This document shows positions 4,231 to 60,905 of a stretch of DNA of 64,000 nt, in pieces; positions within the stretch are counted from its first letter, which is position 1, and the number at the start of each line of letters is the position of its first letter. The notes under the pieces are model-generated. The model was not told the origin of the DNA and made no database searches. It saw only the letters and a program-made list of their open reading frames with translations. Source of the stretch: Phallusia mammillata (lineage: Eukaryota); contig OZ281497.1 of NCBI GenBank assembly GCA_965637545.1, positions 20,274,001-20,338,000 of the forward strand. The letters are read 5' to 3'. The position numbers were made by a program, and so were the translations under genes.

Positions 4231-4267
4231 TGACGTCATATCCCTTGTCCGCCGAGTCGTGACGTCA
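4231..4267. promoter_or_regulatory. Tandem full CRE palindromes (TGACGTCA x2) next to GC-box-like motifs, just 3' of the MKK4 stop
   Basis: TGACGTCA at 4231-4238 and 4260-4267; CCGCCC motifs follow at about 4284-4299. Function is not demonstrated. Confidence 0.3.
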
Positions 4268-5266: not shown

Positions 5267-5443
5267 CAGTGGTGGGATTAAGTTTTTTGTCTGCTGGTTC
5301 TATAACAAAACTTATATTTTTCAGCCGGTTCTGTTACAAAAAGTCCATCGACAGTAACCAGTAATGCTAAGGTTCGCTGATATCATAAAATTCCGTGAGA
5401 CGGTTCTATAGAACCGGTGCGAGCCGGCTGAATCCCACTACTG
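5267..5443. mobile_element. hAT-type MITE (177 bp)
   Basis: TIRs CAGTGGTGGGATT / AATCCCACTACTG. 8-bp flanks GTTACAAC / GTTAGAAC (7/8 TSD match). A related copy in the opposite orientation lies at 47571-47741. Confidence 0.85.
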
Positions 5444-7276
5444 GTTAGAACCCCTTCGAAATCGATTTCAGTCGTACTGTTGAATGCTTTTGAAATACTG
5501 GCCAAACTACGTTATTAAAGGTCTCTAAAATATTGGTTCAAATAACAATGCTCTGCTCTGAGTTTGTTGGTCAACAATTGCCTTGCTGCTTGCTTAACTG
5601 TTTAATTTTGATCCAAAACGTTTTTACGCTAACAAGCATTCTTTTCTTTCTGTAAGATCGTGTGCTTTACCTCGTTATGATTTGAGCAATGTATCAATTC
5701 AAAAACTTACTGGTCGCATTTTCCTTATCAAGCGATTTTACACTTTTTGAACATATAGAATGCTGCAGAAAGTATGTTGTCCACCTCAAAAACTTTAAAA
5801 ACGGCTCACCACTAGTAAAGTAGCATGCGTATGGAGTAACATGCAGTTTAATTGAAACCCTATAGTTCATGTACCGAAAACACGTGCTGCTGCCAAAGTC
5901 TTGGTCAAGACAAGCATTCTGCAATGGAAAAAGATTCCTTACTTTTACACCCACTAAACGCACGGTGTGAAAGAACACGGCATTCAAACAGTGTAGCACT
6001 CTTTTATTCAGCGACAAATGTGTGTTTCTGCTTGTACTTTTGCAAACGGCATTCCACGTGACGAAGGTTACTGTCGGTCGTTTGTCGTAAGAATATTATC
6101 GACGTCATATAAGAGTGTGTTGTGCGTTTGTAAGAAAGTGAACATTCCCTGTTTCTTCGCAGTTCAAACTTTTATGTGCGTGTCGCCGATTCTTCACCAA
6201 ACGCATTTTATCTATTGCCCCGCGTGTTCTATATTGCTGGGCACCCGTTAACGGTCCACGGCTGTCGCATTTGTTTGATTGCAATTTCTCTTTTAAAGAA
6301 ACTGGTTTAAATACACCCAAAAACAGTAACAAACTTGTGATGCCCATTTTGCTTACTTCGGGTCTTCTGGCGGTTTTCTTTTTTAATAATAGCTTGTTTA
6401 CCAAGCAAGTAATCCCAACTTCCAACATTGAAGCTCCCTGCTATTGTTCTGAAACCTCCGACTTAAAAAATGTCAAGCTCTTTTTTGTTTGAACTCCCTG
6501 AAAAGAATTGAGGCGTATTTTTTCGAATCACTAAATTGGCGATACTATCAGCTATGTTATTACTTCAAATTTGACTCATTTATTGTAGTTGTGGTATCCG
6601 CTTTTTTCGATGACTATCGATATATAGGTGCGATGTGGTTTACAGAAGGCACATCTTTCAAATGTGGAATGCCAATGCGATATGTGAACCGATGTTGTTT
6701 CGTTTGCATGCGAGTCGCCAACGCCGCGCACATAAGAAACAAATAAACCGCTTATAACTGTGAACTGAACGAAAGTCAGATCCGAAAGAGTAGTGCATTA
6801 CTGGTTGGAGTAAAAACTCTGTCCTCATTGAAGACACAAGAGTGGTTGAGAACGAAATAAGAAATTTCACATTTTCAAACAAAAGAGGAAAGTCTTTATC
6901 GTCAGTGCAGCTGAATGTTAGTAATCTTGCGAGTCGAATTCTAATAAACAACTGTAAACATTATTGTCAAAAATGAATTGTTCGGTATTTCGCAAATTAG
7001 AATTATGAGAGAAAAAGATATGCAGTCAACGTCACCTGAATGCTGAAATGCACACTTGGATTGCGTAATCAACTCACAGTCGGTTTCCGTTCTAACAATC
7101 AAATGTCAACATTACACCAAAACAATAAAAATATTGTAGAAATGCCAACAATGCGCCTAAATTAATAGCCGATTGCATGCATTGTAAACAAGGTCAAGTT
7201 TTGATACTTTTTGTTGAAACCGCCGTGAATCTGTATCACGAATCTTCAGCATCCTACTATTCTTGACTCACGATCA

Positions 7277-7288
7277 TGCGCATGCGCA
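7277..7288. promoter_or_regulatory. NRF1-type palindrome TGCGCATGCGCA in a CpG-richer segment
   Basis: Exact match to the NRF1/Ewg consensus. The gene it serves is unresolved. Confidence 0.35.
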
Positions 7289-8235
7289 ATTAAGCCACGT
7301 TTTTAACGAAAGGTCGAACTCACCGCTTCGGCTTGGATAGTTGGTTTGTAGTGCGGGTTACTACGTAGGGCGCGTAATTGGAAAACGTTGCAGTCCCTCA
7401 TGAGTTCTTCAGCAACAAAGGCGCACGAAGAGTCTTCTAAGCTGCCAGGTGGGTATTTATTGAATCAGTTGTATGTCAGTGATAAACTTTTTGTACCGCC
7501 AGTGCTGTATATAATTGTGTTTGAATATCCGGCAGTTTATTCTTACATGACAGATTGCGCCATCTTTGTTTCCTTTTTCTCTTGGAATAGGGTGTATCAA
7601 AATCGCGGGTATTTTGTCTGCAGAGTGCCTGCTGAGAAAAAAGATCAGCAAATTATTGTTCGTAGTACCACTAGTACGTCCTCACATACTAGTGCCCGCT
7701 TGTATAATTGCTACAATTGGTTAACGTTTAGTTTAGTCGTACTCGTAGTCGTACGGCAACACATGCAAAGTTGGATTATATGTTGAATTTATTGGGCCTC
7801 GTATGGAATGGTTCTGTATTATTTTATTCATCCTCGGCAAAGTTTATACACGTGTCTCATGCTGTTTTGTTTCACACAATATGTCTTCGTTTTGCAAGGA
7901 ATTTACTCGAGTCAATGAACAGTTTTTAAAGTTTTGTCACTTTGCCAAACCGAAAAATCTTCTCTGAAATCAATTGACCCTTTGTTTGTTGCTTCGAGGT
8001 GTTTCTTTGTGGTATTTTCGTAGCTTGCGCAGGGCATTGGGCACTGTAAAAACAAACACAGATCGGACCAAAACCTAGCCTATTAAAAATTATGGGATGC
8101 CCGTAGTCCATGGCAACCGACAACACGTGATCAATGGCGCCCATTGACGTGGAACGTAGAGAATAACTGATCGTCGTTTTAATCAGCAAACGCAAAGGCG
8201 CTTAACTGCAGTTTGTATTACGACCGCGGATAGTC

Positions 8236-28214
<19,979 letters not shown>

Positions 28215-29081
28215 CAAGACCATACACCTTGCTGCTGTATAAAAATAGGCATAATATGCTTTAAGCCTGCAAATATGCTCACACGTTGGGGAAATGCGCC
28301 TTTTGTGAAAAACGGGGTTATTCTGTGGCGGCGCCCATGTTAAAAAGCCCAATACGAAATGTTTTGTATCATAAGTGTACACAAGCGTGTTCTGGTCTTT
28401 TGAGGCAACACACTGACTTAACTTCATTATTCCTTCATTCGTCCGCTGTTACGCTTCCAGTTTGGTGCAACGGAATGTTTTCATCGCTTTCGTATTTTGT
28501 TGCCATTACAGGTGAACCGTGACTTAGAAAATTGTCGTTGTTTTCTTATTGTTAACCAAGTTCTAGACACTTCTGTTGGCGTATCACATACGCTTTATTT
28601 ATGTCTTGCGCAAATTCTTGTCGTTTCGAGCTTCGTCAATAAAAAATTCAATTGAACCAGTTGTTTGTAGTTTGAAACAATTTGTTCGTTTGTTATGCAC
28701 CGTGGACATATTCAACGTTGGGCCTCTTAAATTGGATGCTACTACGTCACCTTTTTACATTTGTTGTGTGGAACAAATATGGTCGAACAATAACCAGTTA
28801 TGTTTGTGCCGATATATTCAGAATAGTGTTATGGGGTGAAAGGTTGGTCAGCACTGGTATAAATTTGCGAAGGTTTGTGCTGTCATTCAAATCAATTAAC
28901 GCGCTTTTGTGATGTCATAGTCGTTATCATTCGGCTCTAGCCTTCAGTTTTTCACTTCGCGCATTTTTTTACACACTTGATACCGATGCCCTCGGGCTAC
29001 TAACGTTAAGCTGTTTGAAACGCCCGATAAATGATTCGAGTAGTTTTGTCAGCGAGGCTTGTATACAGCACAGTTTTCATC

Positions 29082-32000
29082 ATGAATTATAAATGGTGCC
29101 TTTTAAGTTTTGTTTGGGCTGGGCTTCTTGCAGGAAAATGTGTCAACTGTCAGGAAATAGGTAAGTGGAACTATAGTCATAAATATGAAGTAAAAGTAAA
29201 GGAATGTGTCTTTATTGAAGTATGCACTCTTCGTTTCAATACAGGTCTAACAGAGCGAATGTTTAAACACATATGAATGGTAATGTTGCCTAGTCTTGTA
29301 GGACCATCAAGCAATGCCGAATTTACAAATTGCGCTTTGTTGGTTTTGTGAAAAAAGTAATTATTTTGCATTTGTCATTTTATTCCTTGCAGTCATTCGT
29401 TCCAATGCAACCAGCACTAATTCTTCAACAACTACTACAAATGCCACGACTACAGAAGCAACGACAACGGCAGCTCCCATTACAATTGTTGATCCAAGTA
29501 AGACGTTAATATCAAAATGTTAGCATACCAAGCTTCCGATTGTAACTTTGTTATCCTTAAACTCGTTTCTCGACTTCAGCCATAAACCTATGCTTTTTAC
29601 ACAACATGCATTTTACAGCAGGAAACCTATGCTTTTTAAGGCAAGGAGACAGTTTTAACAAAAAAACACAACAAAATGTGGGATTACTTTTAATGTTGTT
29701 TTTAAATGAATGCAACTGAACAGATATTGTAACAATCTTTAATTTTATTTAGATCTTCCGTTTCCTACCAACATTAAAAAACTGCGAGAAACGTCCACCC
29801 AACTGACACTGACCTACCTGCCTCCTTCCAACTACCGAACGGACACTCGATATTCCCATTTTATAGTAGAGTTTCGAAGGGAAGGTGCAGCATCGAGCAA
29901 TATCTGGTAAGTCATGTCTTAACACAAACAATCGAACAAAGAAGACAAAGAATGTGGACAAACAAAAACAAAGATCTAGTTCTTTCTGTGCAGGTTCAGC
30001 AAAGAGATTGCTAAGACGTCCAATCCGAACTCACTGCAGTTAAATAATTTGCACAGCGGTGTGTTGTACAGCATACGAATGAGAAGTCTGAATATTGTTG
30101 GGAATAGACGAAGTATTTCACAGCCCTCACAAGCTATATTGGCAAGAACAAGTAAGTGCTTTATTGTGGTCCAATACTTGCGCAGGTTGACTCAAAAGGT
30201 TATGGTTTTTATAGAGCCTCCACCTATCTTTGATTTGAAAGTAAAACAGTCAGCGACTAAATGGACTGAAGTGAATGTAGCATGGAGCAGGGCACCATTC
30301 GAATTTCGCGGCCATGAGTATGACAAGGCGGTTTTGACTTATTACATACAAGGTAAACTTCGAATTTGAGTGATTTTAGATGCAAACTTCATACAACATT
30401 GTCTTTTTAAGGTATGAACGACGCACTGCGTTTAAGATACCCGCCACAAAATGTCACCGTACCTTACGTGCAAGCGGTTCTGGGTTCAAATACGCCGCCT
30501 GCTAGAGAGAACATCACACTATCCAACATGATCCTCGGAGCGTCATACGTATTTGATGTTGTGATGTTCAGCGATGGGGTCCAGCCGACAAAGAGTCATA
30601 TAGTGAGATCAAGTCTGACCACCAGTAAGTAGACATTCGATACTGGAATGGGTTTTTGCACGATAATGTTAACTGCATAGTATCAGTTTACTAATTCGTT
30701 ATATTATTCAAAACCCACAAAAACTATGGTATCAAACAAAAAAGAAAACTATGGTATCAAAATTTAAGATGCATATTTTTTTAGATACAGATGTTTCTGC
30801 TTAAAAGCAACTCTTTGCCAAGATTTTACCAGCAAATAACCCAAATATATGCAAAGATTATGATTAACTAGAGTCGCCTGTGCTTTAATACTAATGTTTA
30901 ACTATTAACTTACCAATAAAGAAACTTCATTGGATCACCTGGCTTCTTGAATTGCAGAGGTTCCGGGTCCCGTAGGTTTTACTAAACTTGGAGCAAGTGA
31001 AACAACGTTGTCAGTTGCATGGGAGGATAATCCGATTCTGGAAAATATTACTGGTTATCGACTTACGCTTACACGTCCCGATAACAACGCAACATCTAAA
31101 CCCTATACCACAACATCAAGAAACATTACAGTGGATTTTCTGCTTCCCGGTGCACTGTATGTGGTTCGTGTCGCCGCTGAACGTAACAACAGCGAGTTTG
31201 GAAAACTGTCAGAAGAATACGTGGGATATGCACGAACAAGTAACTATACTTTTGCAATTTATTATTTGAGTTAAAAGAAAAAAGCTATGGCAAATAAGGC
31301 CGATAAAGAGTTGTCTGTGGTCTAAACTTCCCCCGAACCCCAAAGCACAAGCACCCGGTCCAAACCATTTTTTGAAACGAAGCCAGTAGGCCCAAAGTTG
31401 GTAAAGTTGTGGCATAACCGATGCCGAGTGATTTTTATTACGGACCCATGTGGAATTAATTTGCAGTTTTACATTGTTTAGTTTGAACAAGTTCCTTCAT
31501 TTTCAAAGAACGCTACGTTTTTTGCTTGATTTTGGTTTGAAGTAAGGTTTGTCTTAAATGACATTCCTATCTAAACCAATTTGTGCCGGCCGGTAAAATA
31601 TTTTATGTTCCTTTAACAATGTCGATTCTCATTTTTTAGTTCCTTCAGCACCGCGCAACTTGAGTGTCGTGGATCGTAGCGAGCAAACAGCGTCCGTACG
31701 ATTTACTCTGCTCGCATCCAGTTTTTATAGTTTTTACTACATCACATCCAAGACAGCGGACAACAACACACAAGCAGTACTGACTTCAGATGTAGCCGTA
31801 AACAGTTCTGCTCGGGACCAAATAATTACTGTAAGTATTAGCTCTGGCAATTTTTGCTTTTGGGCCTTACTTTGAAAAACTTGAAATATACACTTTTATG
31901 CAGCATTTTCTTACCGGTTTACGATCAGGAGCACTATACAATTTCACAGTAACAGCTGTGAGTAAGAGCAATCTGTCTGAGGATGTAACGTTCAACTCAA

Positions 32001-35000
32001 ATACAGTTTCCGCAAGAACAGGTGAGACAACAGGATATTTCTCAGGGTTCATTTTTTTCGTTCTGATTTGCTACATAACGATTAGGATTTGACTGTTTAA
32101 AATTTGATGAATGCATGTTTACAGTTATCTCAAAGAACAAAAAGGGGCCTTTTGTTATTTTTTATGGTTTTATATTCAGTTCCACCGCCTCCTGCAAACT
32201 TCGAAGGTTCGTCTGCGCGTGGGACGATTTACCTCACATGGGGAGTTCCCCCTCTTTTATATTGGATCACGAGCGCTCATTACGTCATCGAGTACTATCC
32301 TCAAAATGCGCCGTAAGTTACAATTCCAAAATTGACCAAATATTGCTCTTTCCTGCACTTTTTATATTTTTATTTCTTATTAGCAAGAACAGCAGTACGA
32401 CTTGTCGCAACAAGGGGCAAAATGTCCAACAGGTGTTGCTGCGTGACCTTCGACCTGGAACAGCATACGTCATCTACATTAAAACTGTAGCTGGTCGACT
32501 GTGCAATTCCCAAGCAACCAGCTTCGATGACGTCACGACCAGTTCACCCGCAGGGCCTATCACTGTTTTGACGCGTAAGTTATGAAGTTCGGAAAGCTTT
32601 AGGATACATTTGTTGCTTATAAAGCTTTAAATACCTTCGAGCATGGAGCAAGCTTATTCCTTCTTGTAGTGGGCCAGTTATAAAGCATAAGAGACCATTT
32701 GAATTTATTCTATCATAAACCACGGTGAAGTCTGGTCGGGCTTCTCGATTTAGTTTTGAATAAAACAGGTTTGATTCGGGCGTGACTTGAGACGTTTTTA
32801 TGTCGCAGTTTTACCAATAACAAATTCGGGTTCGGGGTGGGATTTTTGACTTGTAAATTTGAGTTCGGGCCTTAATTTAGGACCCGCTTACTCTGAAATC
32901 CAACTTATTGTTTCTGCACAGAACCAAACTTTCCTAGCGTTCAGTTCTGGAAGCAAATCACTCTCAACAGTGTTCGTGTTGCCTGGAACGAACCAGGTGT
33001 CAACCCAGAAAAGATTGACATGTACGTTATTGACGTTGAAAAATTACAAAGTGGAAACGGGTCAAGCTACTTGTTTGAACAGTCCATTGAGGTTTCCAAA
33101 AGTGAGTGCCTGCATTTAACCTTATTTATGTCCCGAATTGCTCATTTTTATTGTTGTTTGTTTTGTTTTAAATCACAGATCAAACTTACTACGATATGAA
33201 ACTCGCTCAGGGTTTAACCTATCGAATCAACGTCACAACTGCCGTGACATCAGGGGAGCAGAGGCGACGAAGCATGGTTGTTCCGAGAATTAACTCAATT
33301 GAAATTAAAACATGTATGTAAAGGGTCTTTTGGTCAGTTCGTACAGTCAAATGTTTTTTATGTGTGTACCCTGTGCCTATAGTACTTGCTGTGTAATTTC
33401 ATGACATGACATCGGGTTTTTATTTAGTTTATTGTTGGTTACGTTCGGAAATAAGAAGTCGAAATGACATGAGCTTGTAACATTTTATGCCTCTTTTGAC
33501 TTGTTCGATATTGTATGATTGTTTTCGGACAGCTTATGAAGAAACACTTATGTTTCTAATGTAGCGTTTGGGGTGAAACATTTGTTTTAGTAAATGTTCG
33601 TTCTCAACCGAGATTGTTTTTTTTTACAGGGCACCCGTACAACGATCACTTTCTCTATCCTACACTACGTTGGAGGTTTACAACTTGCAAAAGGTCAGGG
33701 CGATTCGGTCCACTTCAGTCCTTATGTGACCTCGAGTATAAAGGCAGTAGCTTGGAGGATTTTGTAATCGTAGAGAATGGAATTCAGCGTTGGAAAGCTC
33801 CTGTTCAAGGTAGGATGACATATTTGTGAAACACCGTTTATGAAATTGAATGTACGGCTGTGAAAATCTGTTTGTGGAATGGAATCGTTGCTAATATATG
33901 GTTGTTGTTAAAAATAGTGATTTGAGTGATTGCCCAAACAAACCATATTCTTTGCTGGAAACATTTTCATTAAATTAGGACGTCTAAACATATATTGCAT
34001 GAATGCGTTTTTAAAAATAAAAATGATCTAACGCAGTTGATTGATAAAACGATCTTTAAAGAAAAAGTAGTAAGAGTGTTTCAAGCGAAAAATGTTTTCT
34101 GTTCTTATCTAAAAAATAAAAAAGTAGAATCTTTATCACAAAAAGGAAAACGTGAGATTTTATTTTTTATGGTAAGTTCTTAAAAACATCAACAACAACA
34201 TTTCCAGGTTTATATCAAGTCACTGCTGCCGGTGCTGGTTACCAGGGTCCCGGCGGATTGGGAGCAACTGTGTCCAGTTTTTTCTTCCTTAAAGAAGGTG
34301 CAGGTCTACAGATAGCCGTTGGTCAAGCAGGTAGAGGTCGAAGTTCAATGTTATATGGTGGTGCTGGGGCAACCTACGTAGTTGCTGATGACGAAGACGG
34401 TCAAAGATTTTTTGATATTGATGGAAGTCAAGTTATGCTTGTGGCAGGTATGTAAAAAAACTGCAGGAATTGGTTGAAGCTGTTTGTAAGCACAGAAAAA
34501 CAACTTTTTTGACCCACTTTATGTTTTTCGGTATTAGTTATATTCGCAAAACAATTGTGGTTATCTGACCATTCTAAGTTATTTTTTACCCAATTTCTGC
34601 ATGCGCGTTTAAATATGGTAAAAAACGTTCTGATTCTTACCCCAAGCTGTCCCGATAACGTTAACATCAACATATTATAACAAACTCATCTTTAACCGCT
34701 AGGTGGCGCTGGAAGTTCGGTTTTCGACGCACCTCCTACAAACCAATCATCGGGTAGAATAAGCTACGATGGCGGAAATGGGTCTTATGTTGGGATCGAA
34801 ACGGGGCGAGGTGGTGTTGGAGATGGGGTGGGAAGTCCTCACGGGGTCGGTGGTGAAGTGGGTACAGGAGGTGGAGCTGGAATAAACGGGTTCGCCACTG
34901 CCCCACCTGTCATACGCCCTGGAGACAGGACATTCTCTGCATGTGGGTTTTATCCGCATTTAGGAAATGGCGAATCTCTTTCTGAAGATGAGCTGAAGGA

Positions 35001-37004
35001 TTATGTTCCATTACAAGGCGGAAGGTAAATAAGCACTCTAGTTAATTTCCCAACGCTGTGCTCACCAATAAGTTTCAAATAAAGATACAGGCGTGTTAGG
35101 TAGGCTACATGACCTCATAATGATTTAGCTGACCTATAACTTAGTAAAGTTCAATATCACACACTAGCTTCTTAGTTTTCCTTTTCTGATAATAAAAAAG
35201 TAACGTTAAGAAACATGTAGTAAAACTATAAAGAGTGTCACACAATTATACTCCAGGAATACATTTTATTTTTTGTGCAAAGTAAATTGAAATACCTTCC
35301 ATAAAATAACAATTAAATAGCAAACTTTTAAATGATTCGTTGTAGCCTGAACACTCGGTAAGTCACCCTGAGCAATTTATATGAATAAAACATTAACCAT
35401 TTAATCCTTCCTACTTATGTCAGGTACGAGCGATCGCTTTTTCTATTCTCCGAGGGCGGTTTCGGTGGAGGAGGTGCGGGTTACATGACTGGGTCAGGGG
35501 GTGGGGGTGGGTATAGCGGTGGGGGCGGGGGACCACAGGGTGGGTACTCGGGAGGTGGAGGTTCCTATATAAAGTTCACCGGAGGTCAACAGATGGCAGA
35601 AGTAACCAATGACGCAGCCGGATTTGTCGTCATCAGCGTCGTAGGTAAGAACGTCACACAAAGTTTAAAAAAATCAAATACGTTTTAAGCTGCAGTGCTG
35701 TTTATAACCATCGAATAACTTTAAGTACGGAGTCTTTATAATTTTTGTCTCATTTTGCAGGTCTATCTGCAACACCACCAGTCCCTCTTACATTTTACCT
35801 AGTTATAGCAGCCGTAGCTGGAATAGCATTCACTATTTTATGCGCGTGTTGCCTATACGGGGTCGCCAAGTAAGTAGTCTGTTATCTTGTAAATAAATCA
35901 TCGAAGTTTTGCACGTACGAAAGTAAGTAAATTATATTGTTTCAGATGTACTGATAGATATATAGACCGACTTGACAAAGAGAAAAAATCAGATGACACA
36001 GCAAAGCCTGTTGCATCTATGAACATTTCAGGGTATGTAGACCTATAGTAAATCAACTATTGCATGCTGTGATTTCTCAATGCCCACTTTTATCTCCGCA
36101 GACCAATTCATTACAGCAACGGTGAAGCAGCTACCACAGAATTTAACGAAGAAAAAACGTCAGGTAATATAAATTCGGCCACCTCAAAACATTTGTTTTT
36201 TAATATAGACTACACTGTCCATACTAGGCCTAATTACTTTCGTGATTTTCTTTAAAAAAATTGTCATTGCATTATTGCATCGTTCTATAGTCGGCGCAAC
36301 GAAGTATTGTGCAGTGCTACCGTGCAGCATAGGCTACATTGAAGCACCATCGCACTCACTTTGACTTTGAGCCGTCAATTGTTACCGATATAGCCAGCTA
36401 CTTCTAACCTCCAGTAATTGCATGCTTATATGTTACAATTTTCCACTATTTCTGTTTAGCGGAACGTCATTCGTATACGGACAGTGACAGTCCTGACCAA
36501 CTTGCATCACAGGACCACAACCTAATGACATCAGCCATTGAGCGATGGAGAGCAAAAGCTGATTTTCCACGACCTCCTGTGCAGGAACAGGCTGGTCTCG
36601 ATTCAGATAGTGAATCAACTGCTTCTAGCGTGTCATCGATGGCGACTGGAGTAAACGACGGGAAATTCGTCGTCGATACCCCGACGGGCAAGCTTAGATA
36701 TCGCGGCCGAAAAATCTCTCGAATGAACTCATCGTTTACCGGATTCGAGAGCACCGACGCCGAAACGTCAACCATGGCTGGCCATGACTACAGCGATGAT
36801 GATGACGAGGAAGGGGGTAGCTTGCCACCACCACCTCCAACCCCACCCCTTACTCCGGGGATTCCAGATGAGCTTGTTAGCGAGGAACAAAAACAAGAAT
36901 TTCGCCAAAAACTGAACATGTTTCACGAAATGGCGCTACGCAGCAGGGGTCATGGGTCAAACGTTGAGAGTCACCCAACTTTTGTGCCAAGTACAAATTT
37001 GTAA
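29082..37004 (+). CDS. Type I membrane protein: signal peptide, Thr-rich stalk, 6x FN3, ALK/LTK-like TNF-like/glycine-rich module, TM, kinase-less cytoplasmic tail (~1280 aa)
   Basis: Exons 29082-29160, 29393-29497, 29753-29906, 29994-30151, 30215-30352, 30412-30624, 30958-31239, 31640-31830, 31904-32021, 32180-32312, 32384-32574, 32922-33101, 33179-33313, 33630-33809, 34208-34447, 34703-35024, 35424-35644, 35761-35869, 35946-36032, 36102-36163, 36460-37004 sum to 3843 nt in one frame. FN3 hallmarks (LSVAW, YVVRVAA, LRSGALYNFTVTA). WRFTTCKRSGRFGP...GIQRWKAP..GLYQVTAAGAG and EGGFGGGGAG...GGGGGYSGG resemble the ALK/LTK module. TM is FYLVIAAVAGIAFTILCACCLYGV. An upstream in-frame ATG exists at 29031. 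Confidence 0.88.
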
Positions 37005-37934
37005 GATCAGATATATATTCTCGCAAGTTGCTTTGGCATTTTCTTCGATGTGAACTGGTCTTAATGCCGCCAAAATAATTATGTTTTTGTTGGTTGGTAT
37101 TGGTAATGATGTGTCGATTAAAGACAAAATTAGACGTGGTGTGGTGATTTTACACCTATTTTTGTTTACACCAAAGTCACCGATTCATCAACTGCTAAAA
37201 CGAGGAAGTTGTATACGCAATAGCTAAAGGCAGAACACAAGAACTTGGTTTTGTTTACTTTTTGTTCTTAAATATAGATTACTCTGGATAAGACACCTTT
37301 TCTTTTTCTACTCACAAACCTCATTATGTGCGTGACGTATCCGTACTATGAAGTAGTTGATCATATGTAAAGGTCATTGGTGTATGTACAGGTATGACGT
37401 AGTTATGACGTTGGGTCATGAAAGTATACCAGACCCCAAACCTGGTGTCATGTTATAGAGTAAAGTTTTTATTAAGCAATTGATTTTGAATAAATATATA
37501 CAGAACATTGGGTTGTCGTTAAAGGTAGACTAGCTGTTGAATACATATAAATACTGCTTTTAAGTGCTTTTTTTAAAGTTGAAAATGTATTTAATTTTGC
37601 CCATAAAACCCCAAAATAATAGTTCATTTTTGCATTATGCCAAAATAACAGTTGCCCAGTTGGCAGTTAATTTTACGGTAACTTCTTGTCTACCTGCATA
37701 TTACATTAGTGGTTGTTGGTCCTGATTATTACTTTAAATTAAAGAAAATGTTAATATGCATAAGTTAAAAAAAAACTATTTTAGAGTCTTTTTCCCAAAA
37801 CTTAGTGTGGGCTTCTTAAATTGGAAAGCATACTGCTTTAATGCTTTTTCTTATACTATTACTATACTATTACTATATACTATTTAATGTATTTGTCGAA
37901 AGTTTTATTTAGTAAAGGATGGTTTTATTTCATT

Positions 37935-37937
<3 letters not shown>

Positions 37938-37980
<43 letters not shown>
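37938..37980. repeat. (TA)n microsatellite; a second tract at 38629-38654 flanks the other end of the hAT element
   Basis: Direct reading. Confidence 0.95.
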
Positions 37981-37983
<3 letters not shown>

Positions 37984-38630
37984 GGCTGCCAATGAGAATT
38001 TCAACAAAACCCAAGACTCACAGCAAAATAACCCAAGAATTTAAATGAAAACCCAAGAATGCAAAATGTGGTTAGAAATGCAATTAATTAGGAAATTTAC
38101 TTGTTTCATTGACAAATATTTGACAATTTACAGTCCGGAAATGCAACTTTACAAACTTTTGGTAGGAAATGGTCAATGCAAGCAAAGGGAATATTATGTT
38201 CAATAAAATATGCAGCAATCGCCAGTTCACTCTTGGCTGTTTGATGATCATCATCTGTTTTCTTTTTCATAAAATTAGTAATGTCTACAGTATATTTAAA
38301 AGCTTTAAAACTTCTTTGATGGTTCGCAGTTTTTATGTTTAAACATTGATCTATTTGCATTTTTAAGTGTAACGATTGCTTTCACTGTATACTTATCTAG
38401 AAAGAATTAAGGTCTCGAATGGAGAGAAAATAAAAGAGATGATAAAATGGCCCAAACAGTGAAGCTACCCGAAAAACTTTTCTCGTTAAAATAGTTCTTA
38501 CATATATCTATTTCATCAATAAGACTCAAAACCCAAGAATTGCTATAATTTTCAAAATAAAACCCAAGAACCCAAGACGTCAAGTAAAAACCCAAGATCT
38601 TGGGGCAAAACCCAAGCTTTGGCAGCCTTA
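37981..38630 (-). mobile_element. Internally deleted hAT-like DNA transposon with a transposase remnant
   Basis: TIRs CAGGGCTGCCAA / TTGGCAGCCTTA and subterminal AACCCAAGA repeats at both ends. Minus-strand ORF 38106-38360 includes KSELAIAAYFIEHNIPFACIDHFLPKVCKVAFPDCK, the EHNxPF..DH...FPDS-type motif of hAT-related transposases. Related termini at 49059-49150 and 51119-51175. Confidence 0.75.
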
Positions 38631-39125
38631 TATATATATATATATATATATATATTCTTGTGTCAATTTTATCCATTTAAAATTGTTAGTGTAAGTTTGA
38701 CCGTAGTTAATTGACTGCTTGACCCTTTGACACCTAAACTGATAATTTTTCATATAATATCCATATCTCATAGTGTGTGATTACATTTTGCAATAAAAGT
38801 CACTTTATTATTTTGATGCATATGTGCCCTAGGCTTTAATTTGATCAGTGTTGCAAAGGTGCTTTATCACATACATGTTAATCAAAGATGAGATTGTTTA
38901 ACTTTGTTTGTTTACAGCTTCTTAACAAAACGTTTAGTTTGGTTTTATTAATCTAAACAACAATTGGGACAAAAAACAGTTGAAATAGAGCTGTTTTAAC
39001 CAATTTAAATGTTTGAAAATATAATTACAACAAATATTCCAACAACTCCAGATCATCACAAGTATTGAAAACTTTTATTTTGTGTCAAAACAAAAAAGTA
39101 GCATTGCTGCAATTTTGTTCTTAAG

Positions 39126-42100
39126 ATGTTTCAAGATGTAAGTTTGAAAAAGTTTTAAAACATGCTTTTATAATATGTATTGTATACACAGCTTGTAATA
39201 TTAGTAATATTTTATTGCAGGATAAGACACCGATTGCAGCAGATGCTGATGCTGATGCAGATATTATCTATCCAGGTATAAACTGACATAAAATGTACTG
39301 TGGTGATTATAATTGATGATGTCTGAGTACCTTTTTTATATATTTGTGAATACAGTATACCTCGGTTAATCTCCATCATATTTGACAAATAAATTATCCA
39401 CACTGGGCGAAGATCAGTTTTAGCTAAAGTCCTATCCAACCCTTTTGCCTTTTGCAAACCCTTTTTGATAAGCTTATTGTCGACCCCTTGTTTTAACTTT
39501 TGTTTTCTGCCCTGAAGTCAGTTCGTGCACTTTTGACACCTAATCTTCGATGGATTCGAATAATTTTTACAGATGGTGGATATGGTAATGTAGATGTGTA
39601 ATCTTCTTCGTTTGTCTTGATAACCTAATTAGTACTTACCCCGCTAACCTCCAAAGTGTAGAACATTTTCGTATGTTGCTGGGCACCACAAACTTAACGG
39701 TTTCTGTGATGTAATAGTGTTATGAAGGCAACAAAACATAAGTTACTTGTTTTGTACATTGCCTGGTGTACGTTTTTGCACAATGGCAGTTAGAGAATTC
39801 ACAGCCTTATGCTGTAAGAAGCAATGACGGTTGTTGCTCAAAACACCTCCAGTGGTCACGGTTTTAAACATTATCCAAACGGGACAAAATTATACAGGAC
39901 TGTTGCTGATTAGGTCATTATGGTTTCATATTTTATACTGATGAGTTAAAACCTCAACAATTACCCCATTAACCCCCTGAAATGGGTGGATTTATTAAGG
40001 ACAGCATGTAAAATTTGCCATCTATGGGTGTCAACTGTTGTGTTTAACCCTTCAGTCCCAAGATTTACCCCACTAGTCCCCTAAAATGGGTGAATTTTTT
40101 TAATAATGTTAAAATTGAATGGAATTTGGATAGCTTGTAGTAAAGTGATTGTTTAAGCCCAGTACTGATCACTGTGTTTTTCAACACCAAACTTTGTCAT
40201 GGTTATCTCTTGAAATGCAATACTTTTAACTTTGCATGTGTGGAGATCCATGAGTTTTTGTTTGCAGAATCAACTAGAGTTATAAAAGACAGTGGCTAAT
40301 ATGGGACCCAAAATAAAATAAGTGTAGGGAATATATTTACGTTTCCTAAAAGGTTATAGTGTATGTGCAATGGCAAAATGTGCTCATCCACCTTTCTAAT
40401 TTTTTTGTCCCTTTTTCCAACTACGTCACTATTCGCAAGATACCAAACATATAAGCCACTACATTGCTGAAACATGTGTTGGTGTACAAAAGTATAAACC
40501 ACTACATTGCTGAAACATGTGTTGGTGTACAAATTTGCTATTGCAACAAAAAAAATTTGTATCAGAAAAGCTAGAAATATGAACCAAAGATAACCCAAGT
40601 GTACTGTATTTGTCATTGTAAAAGGTGTAATGTACCTGCGTAGTATATAATTGTTTACAAATTTACTGTCTAAAGTTAATGGTTTAATGTAGTCTAGTGC
40701 TTTTGTGTATGTTTTGTCATTTAATGAAAGCAATTAAGTGGTACAAAGGTACTGCACCACTTTCAAGTGACTTTACAAGGTGTTTTTGTCATGCAGATGA
40801 AGTTGTCCAAGTCTTGAAAGATCAACTTTCAATAGTGAAGAAAAAAATGGACGTAAAGTTGTCACATGATGTAAAATGTGGACCAGCAATTGATACAGTT
40901 CCATTTTTTACATCTGGTAGTTCATTGGTGGAGCATGAAATTCAAGAAAAAGGTGTTAAAGAGATAGGCTGGGCAGGATTTGTTAATGGCGTGCTTGAAA
41001 ATGAACTTTCAGCCGTTGTTGGTTCGTTTGGCTCTGGAAAATCTACAATAGCAAAGCAGCTTGTTGTTCAATGCACAGAGAATGAAGATGCATGTCCAAT
41101 TTTCTTCAAATTTTCTAAAATGAATTTTGATGATAACATCTCCTTTAAACAGTTGATTAGTTTTGGCAATCCTGATATTTCACCAACCCAATGTAAAGAA
41201 GCATTTGATTGGTTTGTAAAGAACCAAAAAAAGCTTTTGTTTATTTTGGATGCATGTGATGAGGCATCCTGGTGGGGCCACATGAATGAGGAAGTTCCAC
41301 TTTGTGACTATTACAAGGAAGTACCTATTTGGCATCTTGTTGGAAATTTGTTAAACGGTCATCTTTTTCGATCCTCTCCTAAGGTGTTTACCTCTCGTTA
41401 TTCAAGCTTGTTAGGTTTACACCATTCTTTTCGCCCAACCATTTGCTATCGAGTCAACAACCTCAGCGATTATAACATCCAGCAAATTGTAATATCTCAT
41501 TCTGAACCGAATAAAAATGAGTGTGATATGTGGTCCAACATGCTAAGCTGTGGTGAAGAAATGGTTTTGCTTGGTGGTAACCCTTGGTTTCTTCAGTTTA
41601 TAATACAAAATCTTCAGTCCCCCAAAAATTCCACACTTACTGGTTGGATGTGCAGCATTGTGGAAAAAATGTGCTCTAGTTCACATTCACGCTTAAGTAG
41701 AATGCATGAAAAATTACATGACATACAGAAGCTCGCCTCCCGGGTTCTGGAATCAAATTGCAACTGGTTTGGTTTGGAGGTATTGAATGAAGTTGGTTTA
41801 GACATGGAAGCAGTACAGGATTTAGTTGTTGCTTCTCCTGGTACAAGTCATCAGAATGACAAAATTGTTTCCGAAAATATTAGGCTGCGCTTTTTTGATC
41901 CAGTTATAATGGATTACCTCATTGCTTGCCATGTAATGTCACTAAATGAAGATCAATTTGAAGGATGGCTAACAGACAAAAAGTCAAATCGACAGATTCG
42001 GTTCATTTCAGGATTACTATTTTCTAAACAAAGAAGTTAGTAACTTTGTGTTTGTCTTTAATACGTCCATCAAATATGACCTCCAAAATTTGCATTCAAG

Positions 42101-53851: not shown

Positions 53852-54433
53852 AGGCCTACAGAACTTTTGCCAAAAATTGAAGAAAAATCCGATTTTGAGT
53901 GGGGTTTCGCCGGAACATTCCAGTTTGAAACTGGTTTTAGCCGGTTTTTGCCTTCTGCCGAACTTCCTAACCTAAAAACTCACAAAGGTTTTTTCCATTT
54001 TACGGTTTTGGAAAGTCAAAAAATAAAGAAAAATATGGCGTGTACAGCCTTTGATATTGTTTTAGATTCAACAATACGTACAAAACTGGCCTAAAAACAA
54101 AAAAATGGCACGCCCAGTTGTGTCATTGGGTACTTCGGGGTATGTAAGGTAAATACATTATACTATTGACTTCTTTGTTGATCCTAATTGCAATTTTTGA
54201 TTTACTCCGACCATTTTTATTGCAACGATAAAGCGGAGAATATATCAATTTTACTTACTTCTCAGAAAAATACATTTCTTTTTGTGTTTACTTTGTTTAT
54301 TTTTTTGCTTCTGTGCAATATACACTGTTTGAGACTATCGCATAAAAGTAGGCCTAGGTGTAAAAAACTATTGTGCACAAGCTTTTTTGATAAAATGCTG
54401 CCTCAATGAAGTCTAAACATTTTCCCAACACTC

Positions 54434-54750
54434 GCATCACATGATCACAACCCAATGACGCCAGCCATTAAGCGCTGGAGAGCAAAAGCTGATTTTCCAC
54501 GACCTCCTGTACAGGAATAGGCTGGACTCGATTCGGATAGTGAGGCGATCGCTTCTAGCGTATAATCCATGGCGACTGGTGTAAACGACAGGAAATTTGT
54601 CGTCGATACCCTGACGGGGAAGGTTAGATATCGTAGGCGAAAGATCTCTCAAATGTTTACAAAATTTGAGAGCACTGACACCGAAACGTCAACCATGGCT
54701 GGTCATTACTACAGCGATGGTGATAACAAGGAAGGGAGTAGTGTTTTACC
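54434..54750 (+). pseudogene. Degraded copy of the 5' part of the FN3-TG receptor's last exon
   Basis: Homologous to about 36504-36825 (AGAGCAAAAGCTGATTTTCCACGACCTCCTGT..., ATGGCGACTGG, CCGAAACGTCAACCATGGCTGG) with in-frame stops and a deletion. Confidence 0.9.
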
Positions 54751-56103: not shown

Positions 56104-59100
56104 TGTCATGAACGCACACACGTTTAAGCGGTTACCTGTATTGACTGCCACGTTTAAGACGCGGTACACGGTTATATACGAAACGTGACGTCATAACTCA
56201 GGGACGACATCTAGCGGTAAATACATACATCACAACTTCCCTTCGTTTAAATTGAACTTAACTGACGTCTCGAAGGGTAAGGATTCACAATAACATTCAA
56301 TGGACGTAAATGAACACGATTACGCCGATATAATACACCATCACTAGTTTTTACAAGATAAGAGCGATGAGATAACTGTTTTTCTATAGTTCCCTGTTGA
56401 TCCCATAGTTTGTTTTGGGTATTGTAAATTTTTACAGGAGTGTTCACTTGTAATTGCAGCATGTTTCTTGTTCCCCTGTCATAATACTTCTTTTGTTGTT
56501 TTCTTTCTTTTCCAAACGGACGGCAAGTTGAACTTTTTAACTTTTCGATATCCAGGGGCATCGTGTGTCTGATTTGCCGATCCATGAGAAGCTGTGCAGG
56601 CGATTTTCCGCAAAGGAGAGGAGCACTCCTAAATATTAACAAACTTTTGTTAAAATCCTGTACACTGGCGTGAGCTTTTTTAAGTAGTTGCTTCGTTGTC
56701 TGGACACTCCTCTCAGCCAGTCCGTTAGATCGTGGATAATGTGGACTCGAGGTTAAATGAAGAAAGCCCCATTCCTCGGCGAATTTTGCAAACTCCTCAC
56801 TAGAAAACTGAGGACCGTTATCACTGATAACAGTTTCGGGAATTCCAAACCTGGAAAAAATAGTTTTCAAACCACTTATAACAGACGCCGCAGAAGTTGT
56901 AGTCAACGGGGTTACTTCTGGATATCCGGAGTAGTAGTCCACTGTTACCAAAAACATTTTTCGGTTCCAATAGAACAGGTCAGTTGCCACTTTCTGAAAC
57001 GGATAAGAAGGAGCTTGGTGAGGTTCTAACGGTTGGCGTTGTTGCTGTGACCTGAATTTTGCACAAATGGCACAGGAAGAAACCAAACCAGATATGTCGT
57101 TGGATAACCCAGGCCAATATATACTTTCCCGAGCTCGTCCTTTGCATTTTACTTCACCCAAATGGCCTTCATGCACACGTTCTAAAAAATAACTGCGCAT
57201 AGACATTGGAACAACTATTCGAGATCCACGAAACAAAATACCGTCAACAACAGAAAGTTCATTTTTGACATCCCAAAAGGGTTTTGCTAAAACAGGACAA
57301 GCACGCTTATGTAAAGGCCAACCATTATTTACAAGACGCGTCACAATTTGCAACTGTTCGTCACATATGGTTTTACTTTGTAACTTTTGTTTAACTAATG
57401 GCATACAAGCAATAGCGGATACAATTAGATCTACATATTCACATACACTATGACAAGAAAGCGATTGAACGGACACACTGTTCTCCACACATCTTGATAA
57501 CAAATCAGCTGTGTGCATGAATTTACCTGGAGTAAACTCTGCGGTGAAATGAAATCTTTGCAACCGGATCATTAGACGTTGAATGCGCAACGGACAGTTA
57601 TTTAACTCCTTGAGAAACAACGCTATGAGAGGTTTGTGATCAGTTTCTACCACAAACTTCTGACCATAAACATACTGATAAAATCTTTCACATGCAAAGG
57701 TGATAGCAAGCAATTCTTTTTCAATTTGTGCATACCTTGTTTCAGCGGTTGTTAAAGCTCTTGCCGCATAAGCCACTGGCTGCCACATGTTGTCATGCTG
57801 TTGCAAAATTACAGCTCCAAGTCCATGTTTAGATGCGTCTGCCGAAATTTTGATCGATTTCTTGGGGTCGAAAAACCGAAGTACTGGGGCAGTTGTGACC
57901 AGCCGTTTTAAATTCCTCCATTCCATTTCGTGTGCTTGCGTCCACTCCCAGTTGCTCCGTTTATGCAATAACAAACGCAAAGAAGATGTTTTAGTAGACA
58001 AGTCGGAAATGAAACGACCTAGGTACGTGACCATTCCCAAAAATTTCAGCAAGTCACCCTTAGACTGAGGACGCTTTAGTTGCTCTATTGCATGAACTTT
58101 ATTTGGATCAGGTTGAACACCTGAAGCACTAACAACTTCACCAAGAAAAGTAATCTTGTCTACACCGAACACACATTTTTCCTTATTGAGTTTCAGATTA
58201 TTGCGTTGCAAAACCGTTAACACATTTTTAAGCCTCATGTCATGTTCCTGCTTAGTTGAACCCCAAACCACAATATCGTCCATAGAGGTAACAACGCCGT
58301 TCATGTGTTCAAACATCATGTACACCAACTTGTGAAACACTTCTGGCGCAGAACAAATGCCGAACGGCATGCGCAAAAATCTATACCGTCCAAACGGAGT
58401 GTTAAACGTACAAAGCTTAGAACTATCTTCATCCAACTTTACTTGCCAAAACCCAGACAAAGCGTCGAGTTTAGAAAATACTTTAGCATTTGAAAATTGA
58501 CTAATAATTTCTTCTCTAGTCGGAAGACAGAAATGCTCACGCAAAATTGCTTTGTTTAAATCTCGCGGATCTAAGCAAACTCTTAGTTTTCCGTTTTTCT
58601 TTTCTACTATTACAAGAGAGTTCACCCACTTAGTTGGTTCTTCTATTCTTTTGATTACTTGCATGCTTTCCATTCTTTGTAGCTCCTGTTGTAGTTTGTT
58701 TTTAAGTGCAAATGGAATTTTTCTGCTGGGACGGACTACGGGACAAACTCTGCTATCGGTCTTTATTCGGTGACAACCTGGAACACAACCCAACCCTTGA
58801 AATAAATCTGAAAAGCTGGACAGAAAATTTTGTTCGTCACTGACAATAGGTTCCAGTCTATTTATTAGGCCAAGAGTTACTGCTCCATTTAATCCTATAA
58901 TAGGCAATGCATTAATCTCCACAACAACAAATGGTAGAGTAAATGATTGCTCTCTGTATTGAAGTGTTAAACTAATTGTCCCACAAACTGGAATATGGTG
59001 GCCAGTATATGAGATCAATCGAATATTAGTAGAAGAAACATATGGACGTTCCTGAAGTTTTTGAAAATCATTCCGTGACAAAATATTAACTTGGGCTCCC

Positions 59101-60608: not shown

Positions 60609-60905
60609 GACGGGGAAAGTAAGATATCGTGGGCGAAAAATCTTTTGAATGAACTTATTGTTAGATTTGAGTACTGACCCCGAAACGTCAACCATGGCTG
60701 GTCATGACTAACAAGGAAGGGGGTAGTTTACTTCCCCCACCTCCAACCCCACCCCTTACTCCAGGGCTTCCAGATAAGTTTGTCAGCAAAGAAAAGAAAC
60801 AAGAATTCGCGAAAAATTGAACATGTTTCACGAAATGGCACTGCGCTGCAGGGGTCATGGGTCAAACGTTAAAAGTCATCCAACCTTTGATCCCAGTACC
60901 AATTT
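60609..60905 (+). pseudogene. Degraded copy of the 3' part of the FN3-TG receptor's last exon
   Basis: Homologous to about 36682-37001 (CCACCTCCAACCCCACCCCTTACTCC, AACATGTTTCACGAAATGGC, GGGGTCATGGGTCAAACGTT, ACCAATTTG) with stops and indels. Confidence 0.9.

What the first reader, a model, noticed from the sequence alone, without database searches (positions are those of the whole stretch)
29082..37004. Orphan receptor: six FN3 repeats plus an ALK/LTK ligand-binding module but no kinase
Seen: SP, Thr-rich stalk, 6 FN3, then FTTC..SGRFGP / GIQRWKAP / poly-Gly segments, running directly into the TM with no EGF-like module, and a ~260-aa disordered tail ending at a stop with no kinase. Known: the TNF-like/glycine-rich (TG) module is the cytokine-binding unit of ALK/LTK, preceded by MAM/LDLa in ALK and followed by EGF-like, TM and tyrosine kinase. 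I know of no described FN3-TG-TM kinase-less receptor. Inference: a decoy or co-receptor for an ALK-type ligand, or an adhesion/guidance receptor that reuses the TG fold.
Basis: partly seen in the sequence, partly recalled or inferred. Interest (0 to 1): 0.75.

Follow-up and report, generated by a model that had tools for sequence, protein, structure and literature searches.

The report
Kinase-less ALK-type receptor of sea squirts
This is a real, expressed sea-squirt gene for a membrane receptor that carries the ligand-binding module of the ALK/LTK cancer kinases under six fibronectin repeats but has no kinase; it is conserved across tunicates, a group reported to have lost ALK, and I found no description of it.

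Summary
A 21-exon gene on the + strand (29082-37004) encodes a 1280-aa type I membrane protein. It has a signal peptide, a Thr-rich stalk, six FN3 repeats and an ALK/LTK-type TNF-like/glycine-rich (TG) module that abuts the membrane helix with no EGF module. A 232-aa tail follows, with no kinase.

Spliced contigs from three studies confirm the junctions from exon 13 to exon 21. They run through the stop and end near 37.44-37.51 kb. No ALK-type kinase lies anywhere in the 64 kb.

Full-length colinear homologues, all named "uncharacterized", exist in Ciona, Clavelina and Styela. The Ciona gene has the same upstream CHD/Mi-2 neighbour.

The TG module is the best conserved part (52-57% identity). 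I could not fold the window's own spliced protein, so I folded the Ciona module, which is 57% identical and aligns without gaps. It gave pLDDT 90 and matches human ALK and LTK at Z 32 (rmsd 2.4 Å over about 250 residues).

The tail is not merely disordered. It holds conserved motifs, including poly-proline and a C-terminal ...FVPSTNL.

The decoy reading is weak: ALK is reported lost in Ciona, and the tail is conserved. TG modules also occur widely in prokaryotic surface proteins and in other kinase-less proteins of the same clade.

Verdict: a new architecture built on a known domain. Its function is inferred only.

The parts
29082..29160 (+). Exon 1: start codon and signal peptide (aa 1-24). 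An in-frame alternative ATG lies at 29031.
   Evidence: Gene model; donor TAGgtaagt; N-terminus aligns with the orthologues; sequence read
29393..29497 (+). Exon 2: Thr/Ser-rich stalk with N-glycosylation sequons
29753..30151 (+). Exons 3-4 (29753-29906, 29994-30151): FN3 repeat 1
   Evidence: aligns with the orthologues' FN3 region
30215..30624 (+). Exons 5-6 (30215-30352, 30412-30624): FN3 repeat 2
30958..31239 (+). Exon 7: FN3 repeat 3, a whole domain in one exon
   Evidence: Pfam PF00041, E 8e-9, 36 bits
31640..32021 (+). Exons 8-9 (31640-31830, 31904-32021): FN3 repeat 4
   Evidence: Weak fn3 hit on exon 8; repeat alignment
32180..32574 (+). Exons 10-11 (32180-32312, 32384-32574): FN3 repeat 5
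   Evidence: fn3 hit on exon 11, E 1.4e-3
32922..33313 (+). Exons 12-13 (32922-33101, 33179-33313): FN3 repeat 6
   Evidence: fn3 hit on exon 12, E 1.5e-3; the end of exon 13 is read in the loose end of the RNA contigs
33630..35644 (+). Exons 14-17 (33630-33809, 34208-34447, 34703-35024, 35424-35644): TNF-like/glycine-rich (TG) module, aa 693-1016, flanked by phase-1 introns
   Evidence: Exon 14 hits ALK/LTK in the PDB at E 6e-7. The family profile hits only ALK, LTK and SCD-2. The orthologue's fold scores Z 32 to ALK and LTK. All junctions are seen in spliced contigs.
35761..35869 (+). Exon 18: short linker, transmembrane helix (about aa 1024-1048) and a juxtamembrane Cys cluster
   Evidence: Hydropathy; conserved block aa 1018-1059; junctions
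35946..37004 (+). Exons 19-21 (35946-36032, 36102-36163, 36460-37004): cytoplasmic tail with conserved motifs, C-terminal FVPSTNL, and the stop at 37002-37004
37005..37507 (+). 3' UTR. Contigs end at 37436-37507; AATAAA at 37489.

Best explanation
This is a genuine, transcribed tunicate gene for a non-catalytic single-pass receptor.

Shown:
- An extracellular stalk of six FN3 repeats carries, next to the membrane, one ALK/LTK-type TG module: a TNF-like beta-sandwich interleaved with a polyglycine lattice.
- No EGF-like module and no kinase follow.
- The gene is conserved, with synteny in Ciona, across ascidians.
- The TG module is the most constrained part of the protein.

Inferred:
- TG is the binding unit, for a protein or glycan ligand that is still unknown.
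- The FN3 array acts as a spacer or a cis/trans interaction surface.
- The signal or anchorage passes through conserved short motifs of the tail rather than through catalysis. These motifs are juxtamembrane cysteines, an acidic Ser cluster (DSDSESTASSVSSM), GKLRYRG..SR.NSSFTGFESTD, LPPPPP.PP, the helix EEQKQEFRQKLNMFHEMAL, and a C-terminal T-N-L that looks like a class I PDZ ligand.

In short, it probably works like an adhesion or scaffold-coupled receptor, or like the ligand-binding subunit of a complex whose catalytic partner lies elsewhere.
For: - Gene model.
- Transcripts: spliced contigs of three studies confirm the junctions from exon 13 to exon 21 and the 3' end, with no onward splice.
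- Kinase: tblastn with a fish ALK kinase finds nothing in the 64 kb.
- Homologues: full-length colinear matches to Ciona LOC100184156 (43.6% over 1249 aa), Clavelina LOC143461040 (41%), Styela LOC120340514 (33%) and unlabelled assemblies.
- Synteny: in Ciona a CHD/Mi-2 gene lies directly upstream on the same strand, as in the window (note s1-366371).
- Conservation by region: TG 52-57%, FN3 30-40%, tail 26-45%.
- TG homology: exon 14 against PDB ALK at E 6e-7; the family profile against the PDB hits only ALK, LTK and SCD-2, best E 3.8e-15.
- TG fold: AlphaFold model of the Ciona module at pLDDT 89.7 and pTM 0.90. Foldseek's top 21 hits are all ALK, LTK or SCD-2. VIA-align gives Z 32.4 to ALK and 32.3 to LTK, rmsd 2.3-2.4 Å over 248-255 residues at 31-33% identity.
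- Tail motifs: shared with Ciona and Clavelina.
Against: - No ligand, partner or expression pattern is known; the function is inference from anatomy.
- The fold was predicted for the Ciona orthologue, not for the window's own protein. The two are 56.8% identical over 324 aligned residues with no gaps.
- The C-terminal FVP.TNL is absent from the Styela-type sequences, so it is not a family-wide feature.
- The runs are only guessed to be RNA, although their GT..AG-skipping joints show a spliced origin.
- Depth from contigs says nothing about tissue or level.
Confidence: 0.6

Rival explanations
1. It is a decoy or co-receptor for an ALK-type cytokine. The TG module captures, or presents to a true ALK kinase, the same ligand that ALK binds.
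For: The TG fold is very close to the ALKAL-binding modules of ALK and LTK. The protein has no kinase.
Against: ALK is reported lost in Ciona, and the paper's only stated ALKAL/AUG-like finds are in lamprey (PMC7851593); that ALKAL ligands are restricted to vertebrates is my recollection of that paper, not checked here. The EGF-like module that follows TG in ALK and LTK is missing. The tail carries conserved motifs, which a pure decoy does not need. No note on an ALK gene exists for this genome, which is weak evidence.
Confidence: 0.12
2. It is a remnant of ALK. The family descends from the ancestral chordate ALK/LTK gene, which in tunicates lost its kinase (and its MAM/LDLa and EGF parts) and gained an FN3 stalk and a new tail by exon shuffling.
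For: Structural identity to human ALK and LTK (31-33%, Z 32) exceeds that to the nematode ALK homologue SCD-2 (25%, Z 20). TG sits next to the membrane, as in LTK. The module is bounded by phase-1 introns. In the TG tree, the best tree found joins the tunicate-type clade with fish ALK/LTK: it scores 23.6 lnL above the free quick search, p-AU 0.84. ALK itself is reported missing in Ciona.
Against: Only two ALK/LTK sequences, both on a very long branch, could be included. The group was named after the tree had been seen. Prokaryotic TG proteins score as high as or higher than vertebrate ALK/LTK in sequence searches. No invertebrate ALK was available, and intron positions were not compared.
Confidence: 0.25
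3. The TG module came from bacteria by horizontal transfer and works as a glycan or surface adhesin, as in bacterial surface proteins and phage tail-fibre tips. It has nothing to do with ALK signalling.
For: TG modules are abundant in Bacteroidota T9SS-type and other prokaryotic surface proteins. After the family itself, these are the best sequence hits, at E 1e-29 to 1e-9, ahead of fish ALK/LTK at 1e-5 to 1e-4. A cyanophage receptor-binding fibre has the same fold. Tunicates are known recipients of bacterial genes such as cellulose synthase (PMC13390645).
Against: A tree that holds the tunicate-type clade together with ALK/LTK is not rejected and is in fact the better tree. The gene has many introns and animal-type FN3 and tail parts. 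The recent Ciona HGT screen names eight gene groups; the text passages I read name only enzymes and contain no mention of glycine-rich, fibronectin or LTK, but I did not read its full list.
Confidence: 0.12
4. It is an artefact: an incomplete or chimeric gene model whose true product continues into a kinase or another gene.
For: A + strand gene with a kinase-like domain (NACHT-LRR-kinase-RNase, note s1-366349; HRDLKPHN-type exon seen) starts about 2 kb downstream.
Against: The contigs read through the stop and end at 37436-37507, with no joint downstream and no coverage at 38622-39400. Ciona and Clavelina proteins end at the same ...FVP.TNL C-terminus.
Confidence: 0.02

Closest known systems
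ALK/LTK receptor tyrosine kinases (TG supradomain; PDB 7NWZ, 7NX0, 7LS0, 7N00, 7LIR)
   Same: One TNF-like/glycine-rich module with the N-terminal F-x-x-C-G-x-x-G-x-x-G-P-x-Q-x-x-C and GIQ-W-x-P motifs. Z 32, rmsd 2.4 Å, 31-33% identity. Type I membrane topology with the module near the membrane.
   Different: No tyrosine kinase, no EGF-like module and no MAM/LDLa. Six FN3 repeats sit in front. The tail is conserved and non-catalytic. The ligand is unknown.
R3-type receptor tyrosine phosphatases (DEP-1/PTPRJ-like FN3 arrays)
   Same: A long array of FN3 repeats in a single-pass receptor. A profile of the family pulls fish R3-type phosphatases through the FN3 region (E down to 1e-36), and Pfam Dep-1 Fn3 models give weak hits.
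   Different: No phosphatase domain. A TG module lies between the FN3 array and the membrane. FN3 similarity is generic.
Prokaryotic PF12810 'glycine-rich' surface proteins and the cyanophage Pam3 tail fibre gp24
   Same: The same TG-type module, often in several copies, in secreted or surface adhesin-like proteins. The Pam3 fibre scores Z 7.6 and is described as resembling SCD-2 (PMC9608196).
   Different: The contexts are prokaryotic or viral (T9SS sorting domains, CHU_C Ig, cadherin-like, LamG). There is no FN3-TG-TM-tail layout and there are no introns.
Other kinase-less TG proteins in the same clade
   Same: Their TG modules group with this family at SH-aLRT 99. One type is signal peptide-TG-CCGP-TM-tail (P0036, P0096, P0146, P0226). 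The other is a coiled-coil/COLFI-like domain plus TG, secreted (P0208; P0217 = Clavelina LOC143446175).
   Different: They have no FN3 array and different tails. All are uncharacterised, and most come from unlabelled assemblies.

Membership tests
ALK/LTK receptor tyrosine kinase family | TNF-like/glycine-rich (TG) ligand-binding module | tested here: met
   The profile search of the PDB hits only ALK, LTK and SCD-2. The predicted fold of the Ciona orthologue scores Z 32 to ALK and LTK. Window exon 14 scores E 6e-7 to ALK.
ALK/LTK receptor tyrosine kinase family | Intracellular tyrosine kinase domain | tested here: not met
   The tail has no Pfam hit. tblastn with a fish ALK kinase finds nothing in the window. 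Transcripts end after the stop. The orthologues also lack a kinase.
ALK/LTK receptor tyrosine kinase family | EGF-like module between TG and the membrane | tested here: not met
   Only about 8 residues, none of them Cys, separate the last TG strand from the membrane helix. The same holds in the orthologues.
ALK/LTK receptor tyrosine kinase family | MAM/LDLa region (ALK proper) | tested here: not met
   The N-terminal 690 aa are FN3 repeats only.
Pfam PF12810 (ALK_LTK_GRD) domain family | Score at or above the gathering threshold (24.5 bits) | tested here: not met
   P0019 scores 23.8 bits. Styela, Ciona, Clavelina, P0204 and P0205 give no hit at E <= 0.01. Single window exons give none. The spliced window protein could not be submitted. 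Homology is nevertheless clear from the profile and the fold, so the family simply falls below the model's reach.
Tunicate FN3-TG-TM family (defined here) | Colinear signal peptide, 6 FN3, TG, TM and conserved tail over the full length | tested here: met
   blastp of the window model against Ciona: 43.6% over 1249 aa, E 0. Against Clavelina: 41% over 1261 aa. Alignment.
Tunicate FN3-TG-TM family (defined here) | Conserved gene neighbourhood (CHD/Mi-2 gene upstream, same strand) | tested here: met
   Ciona locus L009 has a CHD-type gene ending about 600 bp before the gene. In the window, the end of Mi-2 is noted at 28214 (s1-366371).
Class I PDZ-ligand receptors | C-terminal S/T-x-hydrophobic residue that binds a PDZ domain | not testable with these tools
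   The -T-N-L end is shared by the window, Ciona and Clavelina. Binding is untested.

The most novel reading that the evidence does not exclude
Tunicates, reported to have lost the ALK kinase, kept its ligand-recognition module in a rewired form. On this reading the family is the surviving descendant of the ancestral chordate ALK/LTK ectodomain, now coupled to an FN3 stalk and a scaffold-binding tail. It belongs to a small tunicate radiation of kinase-less TG proteins (FN3-TG-TM, TG-TM, COLFI-like-TG). That would make ALK-type ligand sensing separable from kinase signalling. It would also give a simple chordate model in which to look for the ancestral ALK ligand.
Probability: 0.25. Interest if true: 0.8.

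Novelty: new variant of a known kind. Interest (0 to 1): 0.62.

Why it matters
In animals the TG module is usually presented as the hallmark of ALK and LTK, two kinases of medical importance whose ligands were found only about a decade ago. Here the same fold, at Z 32 to the human receptors, sits in a conserved receptor with no kinase, in the sister group of vertebrates, where ALK itself is reported missing.

This bears on three questions:
- How did the ALK ectodomain arise and get shuffled? The module is bounded by phase-1 introns and has relatives in bacteria, in a compact archaeal or protist-like contig, and in a phage fibre.
- What did the module bind before ALKAL cytokines existed?
- Can TG-mediated recognition signal without a kinase?

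It also shows that Pfam and InterPro-style annotation misses a whole family: the scores fall just under threshold, and every member is named "uncharacterized". Ciona and Phallusia are tractable by electroporation and CRISPR, so the questions can be tested.

Tried and rejected
- Pfam on single TG exons gave nothing.
- phmmer of exons 15, 16 and 17 against the PDB gave only chance hits. Only exon 14 carries enough signal on its own.
- blastp of the window TG against fish ALK/LTK aligns only the first ~100 residues, because composition correction removes the Gly-rich part.
- The first AlphaFold run, with an 8-row alignment, was useless (pLDDT 38.7). An 87-row alignment fixed it.
- A profile search with the four full-length ascidian proteins was swamped by FN3 phosphatases and added no members.
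- The window's own protein was not found in the protein collections. A spliced sequence has no reference, so I did not type it in. I folded the Ciona orthologue instead and compared the window model with it in scripts.
- Paper searches for the three LOC identifiers found nothing. A hit on 'ALK' in a tunicate HGT paper turned out to be 'alkyl'.
- The primary ALK structure paper tried (PMC8639777) is not held, so I did not map ligand-contact residues.
- Three rows that sit near ALK/LTK in the free tree proved not to be an animal group: one comes from a compact archaeal or protist-like contig, one from an operon, and one has no context.
- The onward-splicing idea was rejected.
Full report
**1. 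What is in the sequence**

The window has no N and about 38-40% G+C around the finding. It is intron-rich eukaryotic DNA. From open frames on the + strand and GT..AG sites I assembled 21 exons between 29082 and 37004.

The protein reads as follows:
- a hydrophobic N-terminus (aa 1-24)
- a Thr/Ser-rich stretch with several N-x-S/T sites
- six units of about 100 aa
- the glycine-rich module (aa 693-1016, 24% Gly)
- one strongly hydrophobic helix (about aa 1024-1048)
- a 232-aa tail that ends at TAA 37002-37004.

Each of the six units starts at a phase-1 exon border with P-x-P and holds the W of strand B and the L-x-x-G-x-x-Y tyrosine corner. Pfam fn3 scores 36 bits on the one repeat that lies in a single exon, and it scores weakly on half-domains of three others. 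Only about eight residues, none of them cysteine, separate the last strand of the module from the helix, so there is no EGF-like module.

An in-frame ATG at 29031 could add 17 residues. The orthologues' N-termini favour 29082.

**2. Is it transcribed, and does it stop there?**

Four runs from three studies hold about half of the sampled words of 33500-37300. That is what exons alone would give. Their contigs, laid on 33500-39400, skip exactly the seven predicted introns, all GT..AG: 33809|34208, 34447|34703, 35024|35424, 35644|35761, 35869|35946, 36032|36102 and 36163|36460.

The unaligned part before exon 14 spells VPRINSIEIK, which is the end of exon 13. The longest contig carries 2137 nt upstream of exon 14. 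That matches my exons 1-13 (2077 nt) plus about 60 nt of leader.

The contigs read through the stop into a 3' UTR and end at 37436-37507 (AATAAA at 37489). No joint leads further, and 38622-39400 has no cover.

The next + strand gene starts near 39.1 kb. Another note calls it a NACHT-LRR-kinase-RNase gene (s1-366349). It has a Ser/Thr-type kinase-like exon but is not joined to this gene. A tblastn with a fish ALK kinase domain finds nothing in the whole 64 kb. One caveat: the runs are only guessed to be RNA, but contigs that skip introns can only come from spliced molecules.

**3. Relatives**

Exon 14, searched with HMMER against 1.84 billion representatives, gave 178 hits. Most are large proteins with several copies of the motif. 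Two have the window's size and hit at the same position (P0019 and P0021). In scripts, my model aligns with them from end to end.

Word-based searches then named the family:
- Ciona intestinalis LOC100184156
- Clavelina lepadiformis LOC143461040
- Styela clava LOC120340514
- a Logan transcript (P0019)
- a second Logan transcript (P0205)
- an intronless 1761-aa ORF on a TARA metagenome scaffold (P0204).

All carry the name "uncharacterized protein" or no name. The window model is 43.6% identical to the Ciona protein over 1249 aa and 41% to the Clavelina protein.

In Ciona a CHD/Mi-2-type gene ends about 600 bp upstream on the same strand. In the window, the end of Mi-2 lies at 28214 (note s1-366371). 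This supports orthology. I could not check that directly, but it fits Ciona being the closest relative.

No member turned up outside tunicate-labelled or unlabelled marine data. Absence elsewhere is not proven, because the searches are word-limited and length-limited.

**4. The glycine-rich module is a TG module**

Sequence evidence:
- Exon 14 alone matches the start of the human ALK and LTK ligand-binding regions at E 6e-7. It shares the F-T-T-C...G-P-x-Q-x-x-C and G-I-Q-x-W-K-x-P motifs with them.
- A profile of the family's module hits only ALK, LTK and C. elegans SCD-2 in the whole PDB (best E 3.8e-15).
- Pfam's PF12810 stays just under threshold in one member (23.8 against 24.5 bits) and is silent in the others. 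This explains why the architecture is not catalogued.

Structure evidence:
- I could not submit the window's spliced protein, so I folded the module of the Ciona orthologue. It is 56.8% identical to the window's over 324 residues with no gap.
- With 8 rows the model failed (pLDDT 38.7). With 87 rows it reached pLDDT 89.7 and pTM 0.90.
- Foldseek's 21 best PDB matches are all ALK, LTK or SCD-2 (E 7e-14 to 2e-7). The cyanophage Pam3 fibre comes next.
- VIA-align gives Z 32.4 to ALK (rmsd 2.4 Å, 255 residues, 31% identity), Z 32.3 to LTK (33%), Z 20.3 to SCD-2, 7.6 to the phage fibre and about 5 to TNF-family proteins.

The second refuting condition is not met either.

**5. TG is not private to ALK/LTK**

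The best non-family sequence hits are prokaryotic. They are Bacteroidota proteins with T9SS sorting domains and CHU_C Ig domains, and cadherin-like or LamG-containing proteins, often with 2-13 TG copies. The phage Pam3 receptor-binding fibre has the same two-part fold and was compared with SCD-2 by its authors (PMC9608196).

More to the point, a starred clade (SH-aLRT 99) joins the FN3 family with two other kinase-less layouts:
- signal peptide-TG-CCGP-TM-tail (P0036, P0096, P0146, P0226)
- a coiled-coil/COLFI-like domain plus TG (P0208, and Clavelina LOC143446175).

The position of fish ALK/LTK is uncertain because of a very long branch. In the free quick tree they sit near this clade, together with three rows that are not an animal group. 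A search that holds the clade and ALK/LTK together finds a tree 23.6 log-likelihood units better, with p-AU 0.84. Descent from an animal ALK-like ancestor is therefore compatible with the data and mildly favoured, but it is not shown. Only two ALK/LTK sequences were available, and I named the group after seeing the tree.

**6. How it probably works**

The TG module is the most conserved part (52-57% identity, against 30-40% for FN3 and 26-45% for the tail). I take this as the mark of the functional binding unit.

The tail is not featureless. The window, Ciona and Clavelina share these blocks:
- aa 1018-1059: the helix plus C-A-C-C and K-C-T-D-R-Y
- aa 1144-1169: DSDSESTASSVSSM
- aa 1176-1204: GKLRYRG..SR.NSSFTGFESTD
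- LPPPPP.PP
- aa 1227-1265: EEQKQEFRQKLNMFHEMAL
- the C-terminus FVP.TNL, which has the form of a class I PDZ ligand.

The Styela-type sequences keep the proline run and the helix but not the C-terminal motif.

My best reading (0.6) is a non-catalytic receptor or adhesion molecule. It binds an unknown extracellular partner through TG and is coupled to scaffold or cytoskeletal proteins through the tail. All of this paragraph is inference from anatomy.

**7.

The architecture and the absence of a kinase are right.

The decoy or co-receptor idea is weakened for three reasons. [quoted passage not shown] Second, the EGF-like module is missing. Third, the tail is conserved.

That same report makes the finding more interesting. 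The TG module survives in tunicates without the kinase. Whether it is a remnant of ALK (about 0.25) or has an independent or transferred origin (about 0.12) needs the phylogeny and intron comparison listed under next steps.

**8. Novelty and limits**

The domain is known. The layout of six FN3, TG, TM and a motif-bearing tail, conserved across tunicates and unnamed, appears undescribed: a search for the three LOC identifiers found no paper, and the ALK evolution paper and ALK review I searched by keyword mention no such protein. I class it as a new variant of a known kind.

Limits:
- The fold is that of an orthologue.
- The ligand, the partners and the expression site are unknown.
- Taxonomic absence rests on capped searches.

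Noticed in passing
window 54430-54741 and 60609-60909 (+): There are two partial, diverged copies of this gene's last exon: 36500-36820 at 84% identity and 36683-37004 at 80%. The second includes the ...FRQKLNMFHEMAL...STNL end. They lie either side of a 1246-aa ORF on the minus strand (56250-59987) that looks like a retroelement. They overlap the stretch another note reads as a 'two-exon secreted-peptide family' (s1-366360), so that reading should be checked against a pseudo-exon origin.
   Followed up: partly
window 36157-36163 / 36460-36461 (exon 20/21 junction): In two runs a minor contig form replaces the nine letters around the junction with CCGCCAACA. It keeps the same length and changes about three residues. 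It could be an allele, a paralogue or an assembly variant. Unspliced intron-20 contigs also occur at low depth.
   Followed up: no
window 37989-38620 (-): Contigs of all four runs cover a minus-strand stretch between this gene and the next. It carries several differences and 3-nt indels. The 91-aa ORF at 38109-38381 looks to me, from memory, like a fragment of a hAT/GTF2IRD2-type transposase. It is probably a transcribed repeat.
   Followed up: no
P0036, P0096, P0146, P0226 (loci L002-L004); P0208; P0217 (Clavelina LOC143446175): These are two further kinase-less TG architectures whose TG modules group with this family: signal peptide-TG-CCGP-TM-long Ser/Arg-rich tail, and coiled-coil/COLFI-like plus C-terminal TG. 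The organisms behind the first type are unknown.
   Followed up: partly
L005 (TARA metagenome scaffold), 313-5598: A family member of 1761 aa is encoded by one uninterrupted ORF in metagenomic DNA. Its cytoplasmic tail is much longer and different. It may come from a pelagic tunicate with a compact genome.
   Followed up: no
L009 (Ciona intestinalis AP043574.1), 20091-31064: In Ciona the orthologous gene spans about 25.7 kb. Two other called genes, an ankyrin-repeat protein and a succinyl-CoA-ligase-like protein, lie inside its range on the same strand. The window's gene is only 7.9 kb and has none.
   Followed up: no
L006 (Logan contig), 5001-7652: A TG-domain protein (P0142) sits in a compact intronless contig beside a ribosomal protein S17e gene and a methionyl-tRNA synthetase. 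This suggests an archaeal or protist host for a TG module.
   Followed up: no
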